From the NCBI RefSeq assembly GCF_001194135.2, contig NC_068984.1, positions 37,512,044-37,569,584 of the forward strand: a stretch of DNA of 57,541 nucleotides, written 5' to 3'. Below the pieces are notes generated by a model. It saw only the letters and a program-made list of their open reading frames with translations. It searched no databases and was not told where the DNA came from. Both the position numbers and the translations under genes were made by a program. Source of the stretch: Octopus bimaculoides. Its lineage: Eukaryota. Shown here piece by piece: positions 4,152 to 52,442 of the stretch (position 1 is its first letter; each line of letters opens with the position of its first letter).

Positions 4152-4700
4152 ATATTAACTGTGGAACTCGAAGCAATCCAATGAAACTACACAAAGAAAA
4201 TCGTCTCAATGCAACGTATCAGCAACTGGGAAACACTGAAATAATTAAAACTCTTCTCTCTAGAACAAAAGCAGGAAAGATATGCAATGATATACATCTG
4301 GAAAATCCTGGAAGGCCTTGTACCAAACTTTGGCATTGAAAGTTACGCAAACAGCAGTACGGGGGTCTACAGCATAATGATAAAGATCCCAGCATCTCCA
4401 TCAAAATACAGAACCAGATACTGCAACGGTTTTGGTTTCAAGGACCCACAGCTCTCCAATATCCTTCTAAAATGCCTGAAAGGTGTGGATGTCAGCAAAA
4501 CTAGATCTCCTCCTGTCAAGGGTTCCAGATGACCCCACCTCGCGGCAAGAAACACAGATGAGGGCAGCAGCATCAAACCCCCTCATTCACCAAATGCCAC
4601 ATATCAGAGGCGGTTTCAAATAATGAAGTAGTACAGTCAACGGTGATGCCCCAGCATGGCCGCAGCTTTGAAGCTGAAACAATTTAAATATTTTAAAGAT
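4152..4700 (+). mobile_element. 5'-truncated CR1/L2-group LINE, ORF2 C-terminus plus 3' UTR (degenerate)
   Basis: Translates to LTVELEAIQ*NYTKKIVSMQRISNWETLK*LKLFSLEQKQERYAMIYIWKILEGLVPN, matching the post-RT LxLxSLExRR..IY.WKIL.G motif. Contains stops and frameshifts. Confidence 0.7.
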
Positions 4701-4864
4701 TATGTATGCATGTATGTATGCATCGATGTGACTCTATCCTTTACTTGTTCTTCTCTCCCCACTCTCTCTATCTCTCTCCCTTTCGTTTCTCCTCCTCATC
4801 GTTTTCTTTCTATCTGTCCCTCTCTCTCTCTCCCTCTTCCTCCTTTACTCTCTCTCTCTCTCTC

Positions 4865-5316
4865 TCGTTACTCACACGTGCCCATCGTCCATCCTTCCTT
4901 TCCTTACGTGATCTTGTCCTTCAATCTCTTGCGCAGTTCGAACGCATTTGTACCTGTCTCCTCTCTTTTCTCTTATCAAAGAAACTTCTTCAAGCGTTCA
5001 CCATTTTTACCTCGTCTGTGCCTAACGGCCCTTCTTGTTTGTATTCGTTCCGTTTGGTTTGTTATATGTCCTGTTTTTGTTACCAACTTTGACCCTCCGC
5101 AAATCCCTTTTTTTTTTTCGGTTCACTGGTGCAACTGCCTTCAAAGTCTTATCTTGTTTGCATGCTGAAAATAAGAAGTAGAAAGACAGCCAACAACTGA
5201 TGAAGAGTCGTTTTTATATGTTACTTATTTTGTTTTCCATTCGTTTCTCTTTTTTTTGTGTACCCAACATTATTTTCGCATTTTATGTTTGTTTACGTTT
5301 TTGTAACGTCCTGTAC
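4865..5316 (+). mobile_element. Repeat family F copy (ORF-less, Penelope pLTR-like); reverse-complement homolog of 50717-51300
   Basis: Colinear similarity to the reverse complement of 50717-51140 (e.g. TGTTTTTGTTACCAACTTTGACCC, CAGCC.ACAACTGATGAAG, ACGTCCTGTAC). Confidence 0.75.
5148..5208 (+). ncRNA. Degenerate copy of the putative permuted hammerhead ribozyme
   Basis: CTTA-TC-TTGTT ... ATAAG ... AACAA-CTGATGA-A-GAGT, in the same order and with the same 15-nt linker as 50816-50878. Confidence 0.45.
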
Positions 5317-5364
5317 TGATATATGCATAGCTATATGCATATATATATATATATATATATACAC

Positions 5365-13792: not shown

Positions 13793-14099
13793 TTATTAAT
13801 ATATCTAAGTCTCTCTNNNNNNNNNNNNNNNNNNNNNNNNNNNNNNNNNNNNNNNNNNNNNNNNNNNNNNNNNNNNNNNNNNNNNNNNNNNNNNNNNNNN
13901 NNNNNNNNNNNNNNNNNNNNNNNNNNNNNNNNNNNNNNNNNNNNNNNNNNNNNNNNNNNNNNNNNNNNNNNNNNNNNNNNNNTATATATATATATGCTTG
14001 GAAATGGATGCGTAGTGTTCGATCATGTAATAATATAAATAATATATATATATATATATATATGATAAATGTATGTATTTGTATACTATGTATGCTTAT

Positions 14100-17501: not shown

Positions 17502-18750
17502 TATTGGGTCATCCCATAAATAATGCGGTTTTTATACTTTTATTTTTCAAAATTAAGATAAACAAAGTTCATTTTTAATCTATAATATACTCTCCTTCAT
17601 TTTCTACAATGCTCTTCCATCTACTTGGTAGACTTGCAAGACTTCTCTTCCAAAATTCACTTATCCATGACAAAAAATACTCCTCGTCTATGGAATTCAT
17701 ATTTTCTCCGTCCAAAATATTTTGAAGACTACGGAATAAATGATAATGAGATGAGTCAATGTCCGGTGAATATGGTGGGTGAGGTATCGTTTTCCATTCA
17801 AACTGCTCCAGCCTTTGGAATGTCATCCTCGTCGTATGTGGATGAACATTATCGTGATGGAAGAACAGCTTTTGTTTTGAAACCAAAGATGGTTGTTTTA
17901 CTTCTAGCGCTTACTTAAGCCACTCAAACTGCCTGCAGTAGATCTCCTTGTTATCGTTTGATTTGGGTCTAAAATTTCAAAGTAGACTAAACCTTTCATA
18001 TCCCACCAAGCATATAATAACACCCTTACGTGGGTGAAAACCTTCTTTAAATGGGGTGCCGGTGTTTCTTCTTTCCATACCCACTGTCTTTGGCGCTTGA
18101 CCTTTTTAAATGGAACCCATATCTAGTCACCAGTTACTATTCGGTCAAAAAAAGGTTCATTCATGAGACGTGACAGCAAAAAGGAGCACACATTCACTCT
18201 CTGCGAGCGATTAGACAGAGAGCTTGTGAGGAACCCACTGACCCAATTTTCTGACTTTTCTGATGGCACGCAGGTGTCGATGAATGGCTGAATGACCAAA
18301 TCCAAGCCTCTCTGCTAGTTACTCGACAGTTACGGTGGGATTTTGTTCCACCAGCCTTTGCAGGACGTCCTCGTCAAGCTCTACAAATCTTCCAGGTCGA
18401 GGCTCGTCTTCTAGGCTGTAGTTTCCGGCTCGGAATTTCTGGAACCACCGTTGACACTAGCTTGCGCCTATTGTCCGATCCGCATATACTGCATTAATAT
18501 TCCTCGCACTTTCTGTTGCATTGTTGCCTTTACTGAACTCATAAAGCAAAATATGCCGAATATGCAACTTTGTCACTTCTATTATAGCTTTGAAAAAATA
18601 ACTGTTAAAATAAAACTGCACTCTTCAAAACGTGCACTAAGAATAAGGGTTTAAGTTAGTACCTGCTTTTATAGCAAGTTGATGCAGGTAGTTTATCCCG
18701 TCCCTCTCATGCAATTGAAAATCCCGCATTATTTATGGGATGACCCAATA
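17502..18750 (-). mobile_element. Full-length mariner transposon (1249 bp), dead transposase
   Basis: Perfect 27-bp TIRs TATTGGGTCATCCCATAAATAATGCGG with TA on both flanks. Motifs RWFQKFRAGNYSLEDEPRPGR, RIVTGD, HHDNVHPH and HPPYSPDI; stops and frameshifts present. Confidence 0.95.
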
Positions 18751-21906: not shown

Positions 21907-22760
21907 TACGATGTGGTATCAAAAGGTTCCCGGACTAGTTGATAAAAAATAACTTATTTACCTAAGTTTTAACATCACCTCCTTCGAAATAGTCACCTTG
22001 CGTAACAAAAAACCGGTCCCAACATTCCTGTCACTTTTGGAATTCGGCCTGGAAGTCGTTTTCCGCATGCAAGTCGAGGACATTCTGTGATTCGCTCTGG
22101 ATCTCGACAATTGTGTTAAAACGGTGACCTTTGGGCTACATTTTCATTTTGGAGAAGAGATGGAAGTCTGCAAATAAGGCAGATGCAGAAGCGATACCAT
22201 GTTGTTTTGGGCGAGAAACTGACGAGTGAGAAGAACTCGGTGACAGGGTGCATTGTCGTCGTGAAGAATCCAATTCTTTGCGCTCCACAGATCCGGTGTC
22301 TTTCGCCGTATGTCCTCCCTCAAGGGCTTCAAAATGTCGAAGTAGAAATCTCGATCGACGGACCCATACAACAGACCAACAACATCAGTAATGTCGTTGA
22401 TTTTCCTCTGACGATCCTCTTGCACAGGCTGATGAATTTTCTTCACATTTCCGGAGGTGACGCTTGTGGCAAGTCTTCCAGATCGCTCATCGTCTTCCAG
22501 GGATGTTCTTCCTCTTCTGAAGCGCCCGTGTCACTCGAAACATTGCATATGACCCATTACCTCTTCGCCCTAAGCTTGCCGGAGCATGCTCAATGTCTCT
22601 ATAGCAGACTTCCCATGTTTAACGTAAAACTTAACGTTGGCTCTTTGTTCCTGTCCATGACAAAATCGCACGCTGCAACATACACATGATCACAAAAGCA
22701 CAAATGTCACAACTTGCGAAGTAAACACGGTGATGTCACTCGCTCTCTGCCTCATATGAA
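21907..22760 (-). mobile_element. Internally deleted mariner element
   Basis: One TIR-like end TACGATGTGGTATCAAAAGGTTCCCGGACT. Translation includes RRKTPDLWSAKNWILHDDNAPCH; the N-terminal part is joined directly to DRDFYFDIL, so the central region is missing. Confidence 0.85.
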
Positions 22761-24904: not shown

Positions 24905-27042
24905 TTATTCGGAAGTCCTGCGGCGATGGGAAGGTGGTGAAGCATGCAGACCTGACGAGTTGGAAGCATGTAGTCAGCGACCTGCACGTAGGCGGCCCAT
25001 GCTAGATATAAAGTCGTCTCCTTGTCGCCCAAGACAGCGGTAGGATTCGGTTGCTGTATGGGTGTCTGAGCAGCTACATTTGGAGAGGGCACTGCTCACC
25101 CGGTGGCGGGGGAGGTTCTAGAAAAGGTGAACCAAAAATTACCTGTCTTTCCATATCTGGTCAGTTTAGCGCGACTGACGGATGTCCACCCTGCGCTCGA
25201 AAAGCAAAGTCTTTTATTTATAAAATCTGGGCGCAACTTAAACATTTCATGTTGGAATGTGCGTTCTCTGTTGGACAACAAGAGTGATTGTAGGCCTGAA
25301 AGACGCACTGCACTTGTTGCTCGCGAGCTGAACCGTTATAATATTGATATATATATCTGCACTCTCAGAAACTCGTATAGAAGGTGATGGTCAGCTTGAG
25401 GAAGTAGGAGGTGGATACACCTTTTTTTGGAAGGGAAGGCAGAAGGAGGAGCGCAGACAGGCTGGTGTTGGTTTTACAGTTCGATCTGATATCCTTAAGA
25501 AGTTGGAAGAGCTCCCTGTTCCTATAAATGAACGTCTAATGACTCTACGGTTGCACTTGAAAGGTAGGCGGTTTGCTACTCTAATAAGTGCCTATGCACC
25601 TACTTTGACTAGCTGTAATGAAGATAAAACAATCCTTTATACCCAGGTGAGAGCCATACTTAGAAAAATCCCCAATTCTGATAAAGTCACTCTACTGGGG
25701 GATTTCAATGCCAGGGATGGAACAGACTGGCAAACATGGAAGTTTCTAGGACGTTTTGGAGTATGGAAAATGAATAGCAATGGTCTCGTGTTACAATAGC
25801 TTTGCGAAGAACATGGACTTTACATCGCAAGCACTCATTTTATGCACAAAGGTGATCACACAACAACGGGGATTATGTCATCAACCGCAAGCGCGACATC
25901 TATGACATTTGTAATGTCAAGTTCTTTCATGGATCGGAATGCTGGACAGACCACAGTCTGGTGCGAGCAAAGTTCCGGATGATGATTAGAGTGAGAGAGA
26001 GGAGAGGACCAGTCAGCATTCCTCGGCGTCTAAATGTCCACAAGATATATGATCTTGTGGTGAGGAAAGAGATTCAGACTTGATTGTCCAGCATTGAAAA
26101 TACTGCAGCATGGGAAGATTTTCGAGACCAGGTTCTTCGATGTGCAGCTGAAACACTGGGATATGCTACTGCCAGACACAGATACTGGTTTGATGAAAAT
26201 GATGCTGAAGTTCAGCGATTATTGGTGGTAAAGCGCCATGCCCACAATGTATTGCTACACAGAGAACTGTCTACTGTGCAGCGAAGTCTAGCACTTGCCC
26301 ACTATAACAGTATAAAATCATTACTGCAGCGATCTCTCGGGAAGATGCAGAGCACTTGGTGGGAGGATCTCGCTCGTGATGTTCAGGCTGCTGCTGATGC
26401 AAATGACAGCAAGAAGCTTTACCATCTTATGAAGCGAGCTTATGGACCTAAGAGCTCCACATCAGCTCCTTTGCTTTCCAAGGAGTCTTCCACTCTGTTT
26501 AGTAAATCAACAGAAATCACAGGTCGCTGGATCGAACACTTCTCTGAACTCCTAAACCATGAGTCAGCTGTGAATGAAACAGTGACTGATACTATGCAAC
26601 AAAGACCTATTATTGGCTCCTTAAACTCCTCGCCCTCAATAGATGAAGTAACGACATCAATAAGTTAACTGAATCTTGGTAGGGCACCTGGAAAGGATGG
26701 AATTTGTGCTGAGGTCTTGCTATTTGGTGGTAATTATATCACACAGTCCCTTCATGAACTTATTAATGCAGTCTGGAGGGATGGTGCAATGCCTAAGGAC
26801 TGGAAGGATGCAATTATTCTTCCTCTATATAAAGGAAAAGGAGCCAGAACAATGTGTGGTAACTACAGAGGTTTTGCTCTACTATCAGCTGCTGGCAAGG
26901 TTCTGGCAAATATTCTTCTTACCCGTCTGAATGGGTGACTCGTAAATGATGTCCTATCTGAATCTCAATGTGGCTTCCGATCTGGTAGAGGGACAATGGA
27001 TATGATTTTCACAGCATGACAGATGCAGGAGAAGTGCAAAGG
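24905..27042 (+). mobile_element. RTE-clade LINE: 5' UTR, APE endonuclease and N-terminal RT; 3'-truncated, inactive
   Basis: ISCWNVRSL, ALSETR, LISAYAPT, LLGDFNAR, TDHSLV, RAPGKDGI, NYRGFALLSAAGKVLA and ESQCGFRSGRGTMDMIF. In-frame stops; frameshift at a TA expansion ~25346-25356. Confidence 0.95.
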
Positions 27043-50465: not shown

Positions 50466-50532
50466 CACGCACACAAACACACACATATATATATACACAC
50501 ACACATGTGTATGTGTGTTTGTGTGTATATAA

Positions 50533-50597
<65 letters not shown>

Positions 50598-50716
50598 TAG
50601 ATAGATAGATAGATAGATAAAACTTACTTATATAATAATGCAAATAATATATATGCATATATACATACATATATGTACATACGTACATATATATGTATAT
50701 ACATATGCATATATGG

Positions 50717-51300
50717 GTACAGGACGTCATTGAACGTAAACAAGATGAAATACGAACTTTTTTTGCGAACAACGAAAGAAACAAATGGAAAACAAGACAA
50801 GCAGCATAAAGAACGACCCTTCATCAGTTGTCGGCTGTTTTTCTACTCCGTATTTCGAGCAATTCACGACAAGATACGCCTTCGACAAAACAGTTGCTCC
50901 CGCAAAGCAAGTTGAATAAAATTTAAGATTTTACTGGGGGTCAAATTTGGTAACAAAAACAAGACAGTGAAAACAAACAGAAAGGGCTGCTAAGCCTAAA
51001 CGAGGTGGGGTGGCGAACGCTGGAGGAACAAGCTTTGACAGGAGACAGACAAGAATGCGTCTGATCCCTGCAGCTGATCGGAAGGAAAAGAAACTCAAGT
51101 TAGGAAAAGAAAGATGGCCGATGGTCACGTGCGAGCAACAAGAGAGCAAAGGAGGAAGAATGAGGGAGAGAGAGGGAAAGAGAGGGACAGAGAGGGACAG
51201 ACAGAGAACGGTGAAGGGGAGAGGAAAAGAATTAGAGAAAGGATGAGAGAGAAAAAAATGAAAGTGGGAGAAGGGGAGATAAAAAGAATTAGAGAAAGGA
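50717..51300 (-). mobile_element. Repeat family F copy (ORF-less, Penelope pLTR-like)
   Basis: Homolog of 4865-5316; partial inverted copy at 51576-51747. Confidence 0.75.
50816..50878 (-). ncRNA. Putative non-circularly permuted hammerhead ribozyme
   Basis: CGTA-TC-TTGTCG tgaatt GCTC-GAAA-TACG (15 nt) CGACAA-CTGATGA-A-GGGT. All core nucleotides and three pairable stems are present. Confidence 0.6.
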
Positions 51301-51444
51301 AGAGATGGGAAACGAAAGGGGGGATGGAAAGAGAAATAGAAATATAGATAGAAATAGAACAATAAGGGTCGCATCGAAATTATTAAGATAAAACTTACTT
51401 GGAAATGGATGTGTGGCGTTCAATCATATAATAATATAAATAAT

Positions 51445-51511
<67 letters not shown>

Positions 51512-51575
51512 TGCATATATACATACATATATATGTATATAAAATGCATATATGAGTACAGGACGTCATAGAACT

Positions 51576-51747
51576 CATTCTTGTTTGTCTCCTGTCAAAG
51601 CTTGTTCCTCCAGCGTTCGCCACCTCACCTCGTTTAGGCTTAGCAGCCCTTTCTGTTTGTTTTCACTGTCCTGTTTTTGTTACTAACTTTGACCTTCCAC
51701 AAAATCCCAAATTTTATTTAAACTGTTTTGTCGATGCGTATCTTGTC
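51576..51747 (+). mobile_element. Inverted partial copy of family F (reverse complement of 50868-51057)
   Basis: CATTCTTGTTTGTCTCCTGTCAAAGCTTGTTCCTCCAGCGTTCGCCACC... is a near-identical inverted match. Confidence 0.9.
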
Positions 51748-51962
51748 TACAGATCCAAGCCATCACTAGAAAGGAGAAAGCTGATTCGAAGACTACAGAT
51801 CCAAGCCATAACTAGACCTGTCAAAATCTGTAAAACTTTCCAGAAGTTTATCATTTAAATATATATGAGCATGTCTAGACATACAACTATATGCATGACA
51901 TATATACATAAAATAAAACATACAAATCTACACTTATACATGCTTACATACATACATACATA

Positions 51963-52442
51963 CATGATGACTGCCCCCTCGTTATCGAGTATGGCCATTG
52001 CACGAAGCTTAACTTAACGGTGCTGTGATCGAATGTGACTTTTTAGCCCAGCCAAAGATCTACAATGTCTTGCACAGAGTTGGCATCCAAAACCTTTACT
52101 GTCAATAGCTGGCTGTCGTTGTAATTGGGCTCCATGTACCTCTGTGTGTCGTTTAAGTCCTCCTACTGAATCACACTCCCTTCCACATGCCCGACAGACA
52201 TGATTAGTATGATGTATAGCATCATCACCAGCGGCCTGGTAGTCAATCATCAGTCTTGCTTTATGACTACGAAGATGACTCATAAGCCCAGCTTTACTGA
52301 GGCACGGTCTTGCACAGACACTGCATGTCAGTGTCATAGGAAGACCTTTACCATCTGGAAGTGCAACAACAATGCCCTTCCTGACATCCCTCCTTAATTT
52401 CTCATGTGCAGTTCGTGATTTCTCAAAAGTAGTTGTCCCCAT
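51963..52442 (-). mobile_element. RTE LINE 3' end encoding three C2H2 zinc fingers
   Basis: Open 142-aa frame with CSVCARPCLSKAGLMSHLRSH, CRACGRECDSVGGLKRHTEVH and CQLCARHCRSLAGLKSHIRSQH; RTE-like short UTR ending CATCAT. Confidence 0.75.

What the first reader, a model, noticed from the sequence alone, without database searches (positions are those of the whole stretch)
50816..50878. Candidate non-circularly permuted (pseudoknotted) hammerhead ribozyme in a genomic repeat family
Seen: the minus strand reads CGTA-UC-UUGUCG / ugaauu / GCUC-GAAA-UACG / 15 nt / CGACAA-CUGAUGA-A-GGGU. This supplies a full hammerhead: core CUGAUGA, GAAA, a UC cleavage site, stem I UUGUCG:CGACAA (6 bp), stem III AUACG:CGUAU (5 bp) and stem II GCUC:GGGU. 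Established: hammerhead types I/II/III are circular permutations of strand order A(core)-B(GAAA)-C(cleavage). Here the order is C-B-A, which no circular permutation gives. From memory (verify), such permutations have been reported only recently from metagenomic RNA searches, and standard descriptors would miss them. Inference: an abundant animal Penelope-like repeat encodes a topologically rearranged self-cleaving RNA, with the short linker joining the adjacent ends of stems I and II.
Basis: partly seen in the sequence, partly recalled or inferred. Interest (0 to 1): 0.88.

Follow-up and report, generated by a model that had tools for sequence, protein, structure and literature searches.

The report
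Hammerhead-like motif, probably a chance match
One copy of a short octopus retroelement carries all the sequence pieces of a rearranged ("type-SGC") hammerhead ribozyme, but the other copies, the weak helices and the expected chance rate make a coincidence more likely than a working ribozyme.

Summary
Its block order is cleavage Site, then GAAA, then CUGAUGA. This is the "type-SGC" non-circular hammerhead permutation published in 2023 (PMC10085705), so the topology is already known.

It lies in the sense strand, about 95-155 nt from the 3' end, of a ~650-bp non-autonomous retroelement in an octopus-like genome.

Evidence for a real ribozyme is thin:
- Only copy A has the full motif. Copy B (~75% identical to A) has lost G12 and the C11.1-G10.1 pair. 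Copy C lacks the GAAA and CUGAUGA blocks.
- Stem II is 4 bp, two of them G·U.
- The clamp helix that validated SGC ribozymes have, and that was required in the one tested (SGC-3), is absent.
- Competing folds are more stable.
- Two compensatory changes between A and B are not significant (P 0.05-0.14).
- Equally good matches occur in 0.6% of shuffled windows. That is rare for one window, but implies roughly 10-300 per octopus-sized genome.
- No Penelope-like protein was found in the window.

No further copies could be fetched. I put a biologically maintained ribozyme at about 0.1 and detectable cleavage in vitro at about 0.2.

The parts
50816..50878 (-). Hammerhead-like motif in block order S-G-C (formal match to type SGC)
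   Evidence: Read directly. It is the only hit of a six-order descriptor in the window. There is no Rfam hammerhead hit.
50867..50878 (-). Block S: CGUA (stem III 3' strand), U16.1, C17, UUGUCG (stem I 3' strand). Predicted cleavage lies between C50873 and U50872.
   Evidence: The block is conserved in copy C (GCGTATCTTGTC). In copy B it reads CTTATCTTGTTT.
50861..50866 (-). 6-nt linker UGAAUU joining the distal ends of stems I and II
   Evidence: Validated SGC ribozymes have about 3 nt here. Only 1 of 6 positions is conserved in copy B.
50849..50860 (-). Block G: GCUC (stem II 3' strand), GAAA, UACG (stem III 5' strand)
   Evidence: Copy B reads GCTGAAAATAAG, so C11.1->G and G12->A in register.
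50834..50848 (-). 15-nt spacer GAGUAGAAAAACAGC between blocks G and C. Its AAAACAG (50841-50835) can pair with CUGUUUU (50893-50887), called helix P0 here.
   Evidence: It forms no clamp helix with the 3' flank better than shuffled flanks do.
50816..50833 (-). Block C: CGACAA (stem I 5' strand), CUGAUGA, an extra A, GGGU (stem II 5' strand)
   Evidence: It is 16/18 identical in copy B. In the RNAalifold consensus it pairs instead with the downstream U-rich CUUGUC... segment.
50722..51375 (-). Copy A of the ~650-bp repeat family, full length. The 3' end is ...ACGTCCTGTAC, followed by TA-rich microsatellite.
   Evidence: blastn, MAFFT and nhmmer.
4694..5315 (+). Copy B, full length and ~75% identical to A. 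Its degenerate motif lies at 5148-5208, with CTGATGA at 5197-5203.
51569..51747 (+). Copy C: inverted relative to A and 5'-truncated (family positions ~90-316), 89% identical to A. Homology stops 5 nt after the predicted cleavage site, so blocks G and C are absent.
   Evidence: Inverted repeat I5. Alignments.
51529..51573 (-). Isolated 3'-terminal fragment of the family (last ~45 nt plus tail), lying directly against the truncated 5' end of inverted copy C
   Evidence: nhmmer hit to model positions 460-505, E=2.7e-6.

Best explanation
The stretch is a fortuitous, descriptor-level match to a type-SGC hammerhead. It lies in the 3' region of one copy of a ~650-bp, T-rich, non-coding retroelement of an octopus-like genome. 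An A/G-rich patch that happens to contain CUGAUGA and GAAA is embedded in sequence full of TTGTC/TTGTT repeats, and this supplies short complementary strands cheaply. What is shown is that the last ~190 nt of the element are conserved between copies. That this region serves as the module its autonomous partner's reverse transcriptase recognises is my inference, not a tested result. The copies are decaying neutrally, largely at CpG sites, and no ribozyme is maintained.
For: (1) Chance is adequate. Matches of equal summed quality occur in 0.58% of shuffled 57.5-kb windows and at 0.1% of this C block with shuffled local flanks. The window holds 24 CUGANGA sites. Scaled to an octopus genome of about 2.7 Gb (size from memory), that gives roughly 10 (every-stem criterion) to about 300 (summed criterion) chance matches. 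(2) Neither other copy has the motif. In copy B, G12->A and C11.1->G, and the distal stem I pair is broken. Copy C lacks blocks G and C. (3) Core conservation between A and B is 12/13, against 66/85 for the whole region, which is not distinguishable from the background. Eight of the 19 substitutions are at CpG. (4) Compensatory changes in the three hammerhead stems give P=0.05, or 0.14 when stratified by CpG. (5) The helices are weak: -3.4, -0.5 and -1.4 kcal/mol when each is imposed alone. The 66-nt MFE of -11.2 kcal/mol pairs UAUC of the cleavage site with GAUG of the core. The 101-nt fold has a z-score of +0.54. (6) The best clamp pairing, -6.4 kcal/mol, is no better than shuffled flanks (mean -6.9). 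SGC-1 and SGC-2 have adjacent clamps of -7.9 and -15.0, and disrupting the clamp abolished SGC-3 cleavage. (7) RNAalifold on A plus B pairs block C with the downstream U-rich segment instead. (8) Eckert et al. searched all of RefSeq v85 with SGC descriptors and reported no eukaryotic family.
Against: The match is complete: 13/13 core nucleotides and three stems. It shares with validated SGC-1 and SGC-2 the single extra nucleotide after CUGAUGA. It lies in the sense strand near the 3' end of a retroelement, which is where Penelope-like elements carry hammerheads. Copy B shows true compensatory double changes in stem III (G-C to U-A, both transversions) and in stem I (C-G to U-A). Adding helix P0 gives a third one, with P about 0.01-0.02. 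Only two copies cover the whole motif, so the family consensus is unknown.
Confidence: 0.72

Rival explanations
1. This is a genuine type-SGC (non-circularly permuted, doubly pseudoknotted) hammerhead ribozyme carried by a non-autonomous retroelement, possibly Penelope-like or Naiad-derived. The element's RNA would cleave itself after C50873. The 6-nt linker would hold stems I and II together in place of the usual loop-loop contact or clamp helix. Copies B and C would be dead relics.
For: All core nucleotides and three stems are present in the S-G-C order. The architecture resembles validated SGC-1 and SGC-2, including the 1-nt insertion after CUGAUGA and a similar span of 63 nt against 55-56 nt. 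The motif is in the sense strand about 95-155 nt from the element's 3' end. There are two compensatory pair changes in copy B. The locus has a partial tandem fragment plus an inverted 5'-truncated copy, and is flanked by TA-rich microsatellite, as described for Penelope-like elements. Naiad elements lack canonical hammerheads, yet some have 'half cores' with the second half 35-50 nt away on either side. A lone descriptor match (GCS-1) did cleave in vitro in Eckert et al..
Against: This rests on a single intact copy. G12 and C11.1 are lost in B, and blocks G and C are absent in C. Stem II has two G.U pairs. There is no clamp helix. Competing folds are more stable. Covariation is not significant. 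The genome-wide chance expectation is high. Full-length copies start at a fixed 5' end rather than at the cleavage site, and cleavage inside a monomeric transcript would separate the body from its 3' end. No Penelope-like protein lies nearby.
Confidence: 0.1
2. The region folds into a different conserved RNA structure. This would be a hairpin made of P0 (CUGUUUU:AAAACAG) and the 'stem III' helix, possibly with its loop pairing to CGACAA as an H-type pseudoknot. It would serve as a recognition or priming module for the partner reverse transcriptase. The hammerhead core letters would be incidental.
For: P0 and stem III are nested and both appear in predicted folds. Three compensatory pair changes across P0, stem III and stem I give P about 0.01-0.02 in permutation tests. 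The spacer and block C are the best conserved part between A and B, at 29/33 positions.
Against: Only two sequences are available. Three pairs are broken in B. The fold energy is no better than for shuffled sequence (z +0.54). RNAalifold prefers another partner for block C. CpG hypermutability inflates apparent compensation.
Confidence: 0.15

Closest known systems
Type-SGC hammerhead ribozymes (HRIMA-1 motif and SGC variants; Eckert, Friedrich, Weinberg & Weinberg 2023, PMC10085705)
   Same: Same block order (Site, GAAA, CUGAnGA). Same core letters. Three mutually crossing stems. A short linker runs from stem I directly into stem II. One extra nucleotide follows CUGAUGA. Overall size is similar, 63 nt against 55-56 nt.
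   Different: The known examples come from metatranscriptomes and were found near hairpin ribozymes. They have Watson-Crick stem II helices of 4-6 bp, a ~3-nt linker, and a 6-8-bp clamp helix between the G-C spacer and the sequence just 3' of block C; that helix was essential in SGC-3. Here stem II is half G.U, the linker is 6 nt, the spacer is 15 nt, no clamp is detectable, and the host is an animal genome repeat.
GCS-1, the single type-GCS candidate from Caballeronia peredens (same paper)
   Same: It is a lone sequence that fits a permuted-hammerhead descriptor and has no homologues to provide covariation.
   Different: GCS-1 was shown to cleave, incompletely, in vitro. Nothing has been tested here. 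The authors themselves judged its biological relevance unclear.
Minimal type-I hammerheads of Penelope-like elements and animal retrozymes (Cervera & de la Pena 2014, PMC4209133; Lunse et al. 2017)
   Same: They are carried by a retroelement in the sense strand, in the terminal repeat or 3' region, and are found in invertebrate genomes.
   Different: Those have the canonical order C-G-S with a very short helix III, act as dimers, and are found by Rfam and standard descriptors. No such motif exists here: there is no GAAA downstream of CUGAUGA and no Rfam hit.
'HHR_core' and 'HHR_half_core' annotations in Naiad Penelope-like elements (Craig et al. 2021, PMC8557442)
   Same: Hammerhead core halves in a retroelement 3' region that do not fit canonical descriptors, with the second half on either side. 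Naiads show a (TA)n insertion bias, and old Naiad remnants are reported in Octopus.
   Different: No structure or activity was proposed for those cases. I could not show that this family is related to Naiads.

Membership tests
Hammerhead ribozyme (any topology) | Conserved core: CUGANGA, GAAA, and a U16.1-H17 cleavage dinucleotide | tested here: met
   CUGAUGA is at 50827-50821, GAAA at 50856-50853 and UC at 50874-50873 in copy A.
Hammerhead ribozyme (any topology) | Stems I, II and III directly abut the core, including the G10.1-C11.1 and A15.1-U16.1 pairs | tested here: met
   Stem I has 6 Watson-Crick pairs. Stem III has 4 pairs plus A-U. Stem II has 4 pairs (G-C, G.U, G-C, U.G) after a 1-nt insertion. 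Stem II is marginal.
Hammerhead ribozyme (any topology) | Core and stems conserved or covarying among homologues | tested here: not met
   Copy B has G12->A and C11.1->G, with 2 pairs broken and 2 compensated. Copy C lacks blocks G and C. Permutation P is 0.05-0.14. Only 2-3 copies were available, so this is weak evidence in both directions.
Hammerhead ribozyme (any topology) | Site-specific self-cleavage that depends on G5, G8 and G12 | not testable with these tools
   This needs in vitro transcription and mapping.
Rfam hammerhead families (types I, II, III, HH9, HH10) | Score against the covariance models | tested here: not met
   There is no hit at gathering thresholds in the whole window, and none at E<=10 in 50500-51200. 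This is expected for a non-circular permutation.
Type-SGC hammerhead (Eckert et al. 2023) | Block order S-G-C, with stem I joined directly to stem II by a short linker | tested here: met
   The order is SGC. The linker is 6 nt, against about 3 nt in the published examples.
Type-SGC hammerhead (Eckert et al. 2023) | A helix joining the other sides of stems I and II (G-C spacer pairing with the sequence 3' of block C), required for SGC-3 activity | tested here: not met
   The best pairing is -6.4 kcal/mol, starts 10 nt after stem II, and is no better than shuffled flanks (55.7% of shuffles are at least as good). It is not kept in copy B.
Type-SGC hammerhead (Eckert et al. 2023) | Sequence homology to the HRIMA-1 or SGC-variant alignments | not tested
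   The alignments are held only as images. Stem I (UUGUCG) differs from the AUGUU of HRIMA-1.
Penelope-like element (autonomous or derived) | RT plus GIY-YIG ORF, or 3'-end identity to such an element | tested here: not met
   Pfam scans of the window's ten best ORFs found only C2H2 fingers and a weak LINE-type endonuclease match. 3'-end identity to an autonomous partner cannot be tested without the genome.
Penelope-like element (autonomous or derived) | Partial tandem (pLTR) plus an adjacent inverted 5'-truncated copy, and a microsatellite target | tested here: inconclusive
   A 3' fragment lies against an inverted 5'-truncated copy upstream of copy A, and the flanks are TA-rich. LINE-type twin priming with microsatellite tails would look the same.

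The most novel reading that the evidence does not exclude
Copy A preserves a working type-SGC hammerhead. That would make this octopus repeat the first non-circularly permuted ribozyme found in a eukaryotic genome and in a retrotransposon. It would also hint that Penelope-like clades said to 'lack' hammerheads, such as Naiads with half cores, carry permuted ones that standard descriptors miss.
Probability: 0.1. Interest if true: 0.75.

Novelty: not a real feature. Interest (0 to 1): 0.25.

Why it matters
If real, it would move non-circular RNA permutations from environmental circular RNAs into animal genomes. It would give retroelement biology a new ribozyme topology to search for. It would also mean that hammerhead censuses based on Rfam or three-way-junction descriptors undercount.

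As it stands, the finding is mainly a caution. The hammerhead is so simple that, once all six block orders are allowed, complete descriptor matches are expected by chance in every large genome. Eckert et al. accepted candidates only with covariation or cleavage data, and the same standard should apply here.

Tried and rejected
- **Canonical hammerhead in the family.** Rfam gave nothing at gathering thresholds or at E<=10. My descriptor, which also covers the CGS, GSC and SCG orders, found only the SGC hit. There is no GAAA in the ~110 nt downstream of CUGAUGA.
- **Tandem or dimer reading.** Tandem copies of S-G-C only give its circular permutations G-C-S and C-S-G, never C-G-S, so tandem units cannot produce a canonical hammerhead.
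- **Getting more family copies.** All attempts failed.
  - A protein search with the element's open frame found no candidates.
  - Two metagenome scans and one viral scan with conserved 23-24-mers gave 0 hits.
  - The zinc-finger ORF search returned only a UniRef octopus entry with no DNA, so I did not expect the contig look-up route to yield octopus DNA and did not try it.
  - nhmmer with an A+B profile found no further copies in the window.
- **Supplements of the Naiad paper.** They are either not held or carry no hammerhead data.
- **Clamp helix.** It is no better than shuffled flanks.
- **Copy C ending at the cleavage site.** The idea that its breakpoint marks ribozyme cleavage is rejected, because homology runs 5 nt past the site.
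- **Sub-threshold miRNA hits.** The mir-297 and mir-466 hits next to the element fall on TA/CA microsatellite palindromes, well below gathering scores.

Full report
**Observation.**

The minus strand from 50879 to 50814 reads GCGUAUC UUGUCG UGAAUU GCUC GAAA UACG GAGUAGAAAAACAGC CGACAA CUGAUGA A GGGU CG.
- CUGAUGA is at 50827-50821 and GAAA at 50856-50853.
- The cleavage dinucleotide is U50874-C50873.
- Stem I is UUGUCG:CGACAA, 6 Watson-Crick pairs.
- Stem III is CGUAU:AUACG, 4 bp plus the A15.1-U16.1 pair.
- Stem II is GCUC:GGGU, 4 bp of which two are G·U, with one extra A after CUGAUGA.

The three helices all cross each other, so this is a true non-circular permutation.

**What the topology corresponds to.**

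Eckert et al. 2023 (PMC10085705) divide the hammerhead into blocks S (cleavage site), G (GAAA) and C (CUGAnGA). Types I, II and III are CGS, GSC and SCG. They discovered and validated "type SGC" (583 sequences, from metatranscriptomes) and type CSG.

The candidate has order S-G-C, so it belongs to an already published class. I rebuilt the validated SGC-1 and SGC-2 sequences from the paper's oligonucleotide table. My descriptor calls both SGC. Both carry one extra nucleotide after CUGAUGA, as the candidate does.

They differ from the candidate in several ways.
- Their stem II is 5-6 bp, with at most one G·U pair.
- Their stem I to stem II linker is about 3 nt.
- They have a 6-8-bp clamp helix between the G-C spacer and the sequence immediately 3' of block C. 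Disrupting that clamp abolished SGC-3 cleavage.

The candidate's best clamp pairing is -6.4 kcal/mol and starts 10 nt after stem II. It is no better than shuffled flanks, which average -6.9 kcal/mol; 56% of shuffles are at least as good. It is also not kept in copy B.

**Context.**

The window looks like animal DNA. GC content is about 35%, microsatellites and N gaps are abundant, and there are LINE fragments. A C2H2 zinc-finger ORF at 52017-52442 (minus strand) is 93% identical, over a third of its length, to an Octopus bimaculoides protein.

The motif lies in a repeat family of about 650 bp. The window holds these copies:
- Copy A, 51375→50722 on the minus strand, full length.
- Copy B, 4694-5315 on the plus strand, full length and ~75% identical to A.
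- Copy C, 51569-51747 on the plus strand, 89% identical to A, inverted and 5'-truncated.
- A ~45-nt 3'-terminal fragment, 51573→51529 on the minus strand.

Copies end in ...ACGTCCTGTAC followed by TA-rich microsatellite. 5' truncation with retention of the 3' end indicates a retroelement whose sense strand is the hammerhead strand. The motif sits about 95-155 nt from that 3' end.

A 3' fragment lying against an inverted 5'-truncated copy, and the TA-rich flanks, fit the architecture described for Penelope-like elements. They fit LINE-type twin priming equally well. No RT or GIY-YIG domain was detected in the window. "Penelope-like" therefore remains unproven.

**Is it more than chance?**

In this window the descriptor finds only this site, even with loose thresholds and all six block orders.
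- In 8000 dinucleotide-preserving shuffles, loose matches occur 0.16 times per window.
- Matches with at least 12 Watson-Crick pairs and at least 14 total pairs occur in 0.58% of windows.
- Matches at least as good in every stem occur in 0.025% of windows.
- With this C block held fixed and only the local flanks shuffled, the rates are 0.10% and 0.0025%.

The local per-site rate is about four times the global one, because the element is rich in TTGTC/TTGTT repeats that complement GACAA. The window has 24 CUGANGA sites.

For one window the match is unlikely. For an octopus genome of about 2.7 Gb (size from memory), roughly 10 to 300 equally good chance matches are expected. This is why Eckert et al. 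required covariation.

**Family evidence.**

Copy B keeps CUGAUGA and UC. In register, however, it reads GCUGAAAAUAAG, so the invariant G12 becomes A and C11.1 becomes G.

Of the 15 hammerhead pairs, comparing copy A with copy B:
- 10 are unchanged.
- 2 show compensatory double changes: G-C to U-A in stem III and C-G to U-A in stem I.
- 1 changes on one side and stays paired.
- 2 are broken.

Permutation of the observed substitutions gives P=0.05 for at least 2 compensations, or 0.14 when CpG sites are permuted among themselves. Eight of the 19 substitutions fall on CpG positions. Adding an extra helix P0 (CUGUUUU 50893-50887 with AAAACAG 50841-50835) gives a third compensation and P of about 0.01-0.02. 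That is a hint of some RNA structure, not specifically of a hammerhead.

Core conservation is 12/13, which is not distinguishable from the regional 66/85.

Copy C matches through GCGUAUCUUGUC and then diverges completely, so it lacks blocks G and C.

**Energetics.**

Imposed one at a time, the three stems contribute -3.4, -0.5 and -1.4 kcal/mol. The 66-nt minimum-energy fold (-11.2 kcal/mol) extends stem I by pairing UAUC of the cleavage site with GAUG of the core. The 101-nt fold is no more stable than shuffled sequence, with z=+0.54. RNAalifold on A plus B keeps the stem III hairpin but pairs block C with the downstream U-rich segment.

**Literature.**

The held library contains no report of a permuted hammerhead in an animal or a retroelement. 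Eckert et al. searched RefSeq v85 with SGC descriptors and reported no eukaryotic family.

Craig et al. 2021 note that Naiad Penelope-like elements lack canonical hammerheads and insert into (TA)n. Some have "half cores" with the second half 35-50 nt away on either side. Octopus species carry old Naiad remnants. This is a lead for the novel reading, but I could not connect this family to Naiads.

**Verdict.**

The most probable explanation is a coincidental, complete descriptor match in one decaying copy of a non-autonomous retroelement (confidence about 0.72). The alternatives are a genuine type-SGC ribozyme (about 0.1) and a different conserved 3' RNA fold (about 0.15). I estimate about 0.2 for detectable site-specific cleavage in vitro, since even the lone GCS-1 match cleaved.

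The question is cheaply decidable with the full genome (family consensus and covariation) and a one-day transcription assay. No further copies could be fetched with the tools available here.

Noticed in passing
window 52017-52442 (-): A stand-alone 142-aa ORF with three C2H2 zinc fingers (Pfam zf-C2H2 families). It is followed about 40 nt later by an (ATGT)n tail. It is 93% identical over 31% of its length to an uncharacterised Octopus bimaculoides protein (A0A0L8FMV2). It may be the 3' end of another retroelement. It is also the only clue to the organism.
   Followed up: partly
window 25332-26935 (+): LINE-like ORF fragments. There is a weak Exo_endo_phos (APE endonuclease) match at 25332-25796, followed by open frames that look like the start of a reverse transcriptase. 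The element is degenerate and interrupted.
   Followed up: partly
window 51395-51445 (-) and 13997-14044 (-): A ~48-nt motif (TATTATTTATATTATTATATGATTGAACGCCACACATCCATTTCCA) occurs twice at 90% identity. Both occurrences lie next to N gaps or microsatellites. It is probably the end of another dispersed repeat, and it sits just upstream of copy A.
   Followed up: no
window 51746-51815 (+): Just after copy C's breakpoint there is a 24-nt direct repeat, CTACAGATCCAAGCCAT(C/A)ACTAGA, flanking 22 nt. This ~105-nt segment has no other copy in the window. It may be a local duplication or the variant 3' end of a different subfamily.
   Followed up: partly
window 50640-50720 (both strands): Sub-threshold Rfam hits to mir-297, mir-466, mir-568 and others (up to 52 bits against gathering scores of 75-100). 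They fall on a TA/CA microsatellite palindrome directly 3' of copy A. I read these as low-complexity artefacts, not miRNA genes.
   Followed up: yes
window 17578-17910 (-) and 22147-22530 (-): Open frames that by eye resemble mariner/Tc1-type transposase remnants (for example ...HPPYSPDIDSSHYHLFRSLQ...). Pfam gave no hit at E<=0.01.
   Followed up: partly
whole window: Microsatellites are extremely dense: (TG)n, (TA)n, (TAGA)n, (ATT)n and CT-rich tracts. There are 3284 N in several assembly gaps. Most 'ORFs' of 120 aa or more are translations of these repeats.
   Followed up: no
window 50715-50900 (-) / 5124-5318 (+): RNAalifold on copies A and B predicts a long imperfect hairpin. The purine-rich GAGUAGAAAAACAGCCGACAACUGAUGAAGGG segment pairs with the following U-rich segment. 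Of 40 predicted pairs none is broken, 2 are double changes and 8 are one-sided changes. With only two sequences, RNAalifold favours such structures by construction.
   Followed up: partly
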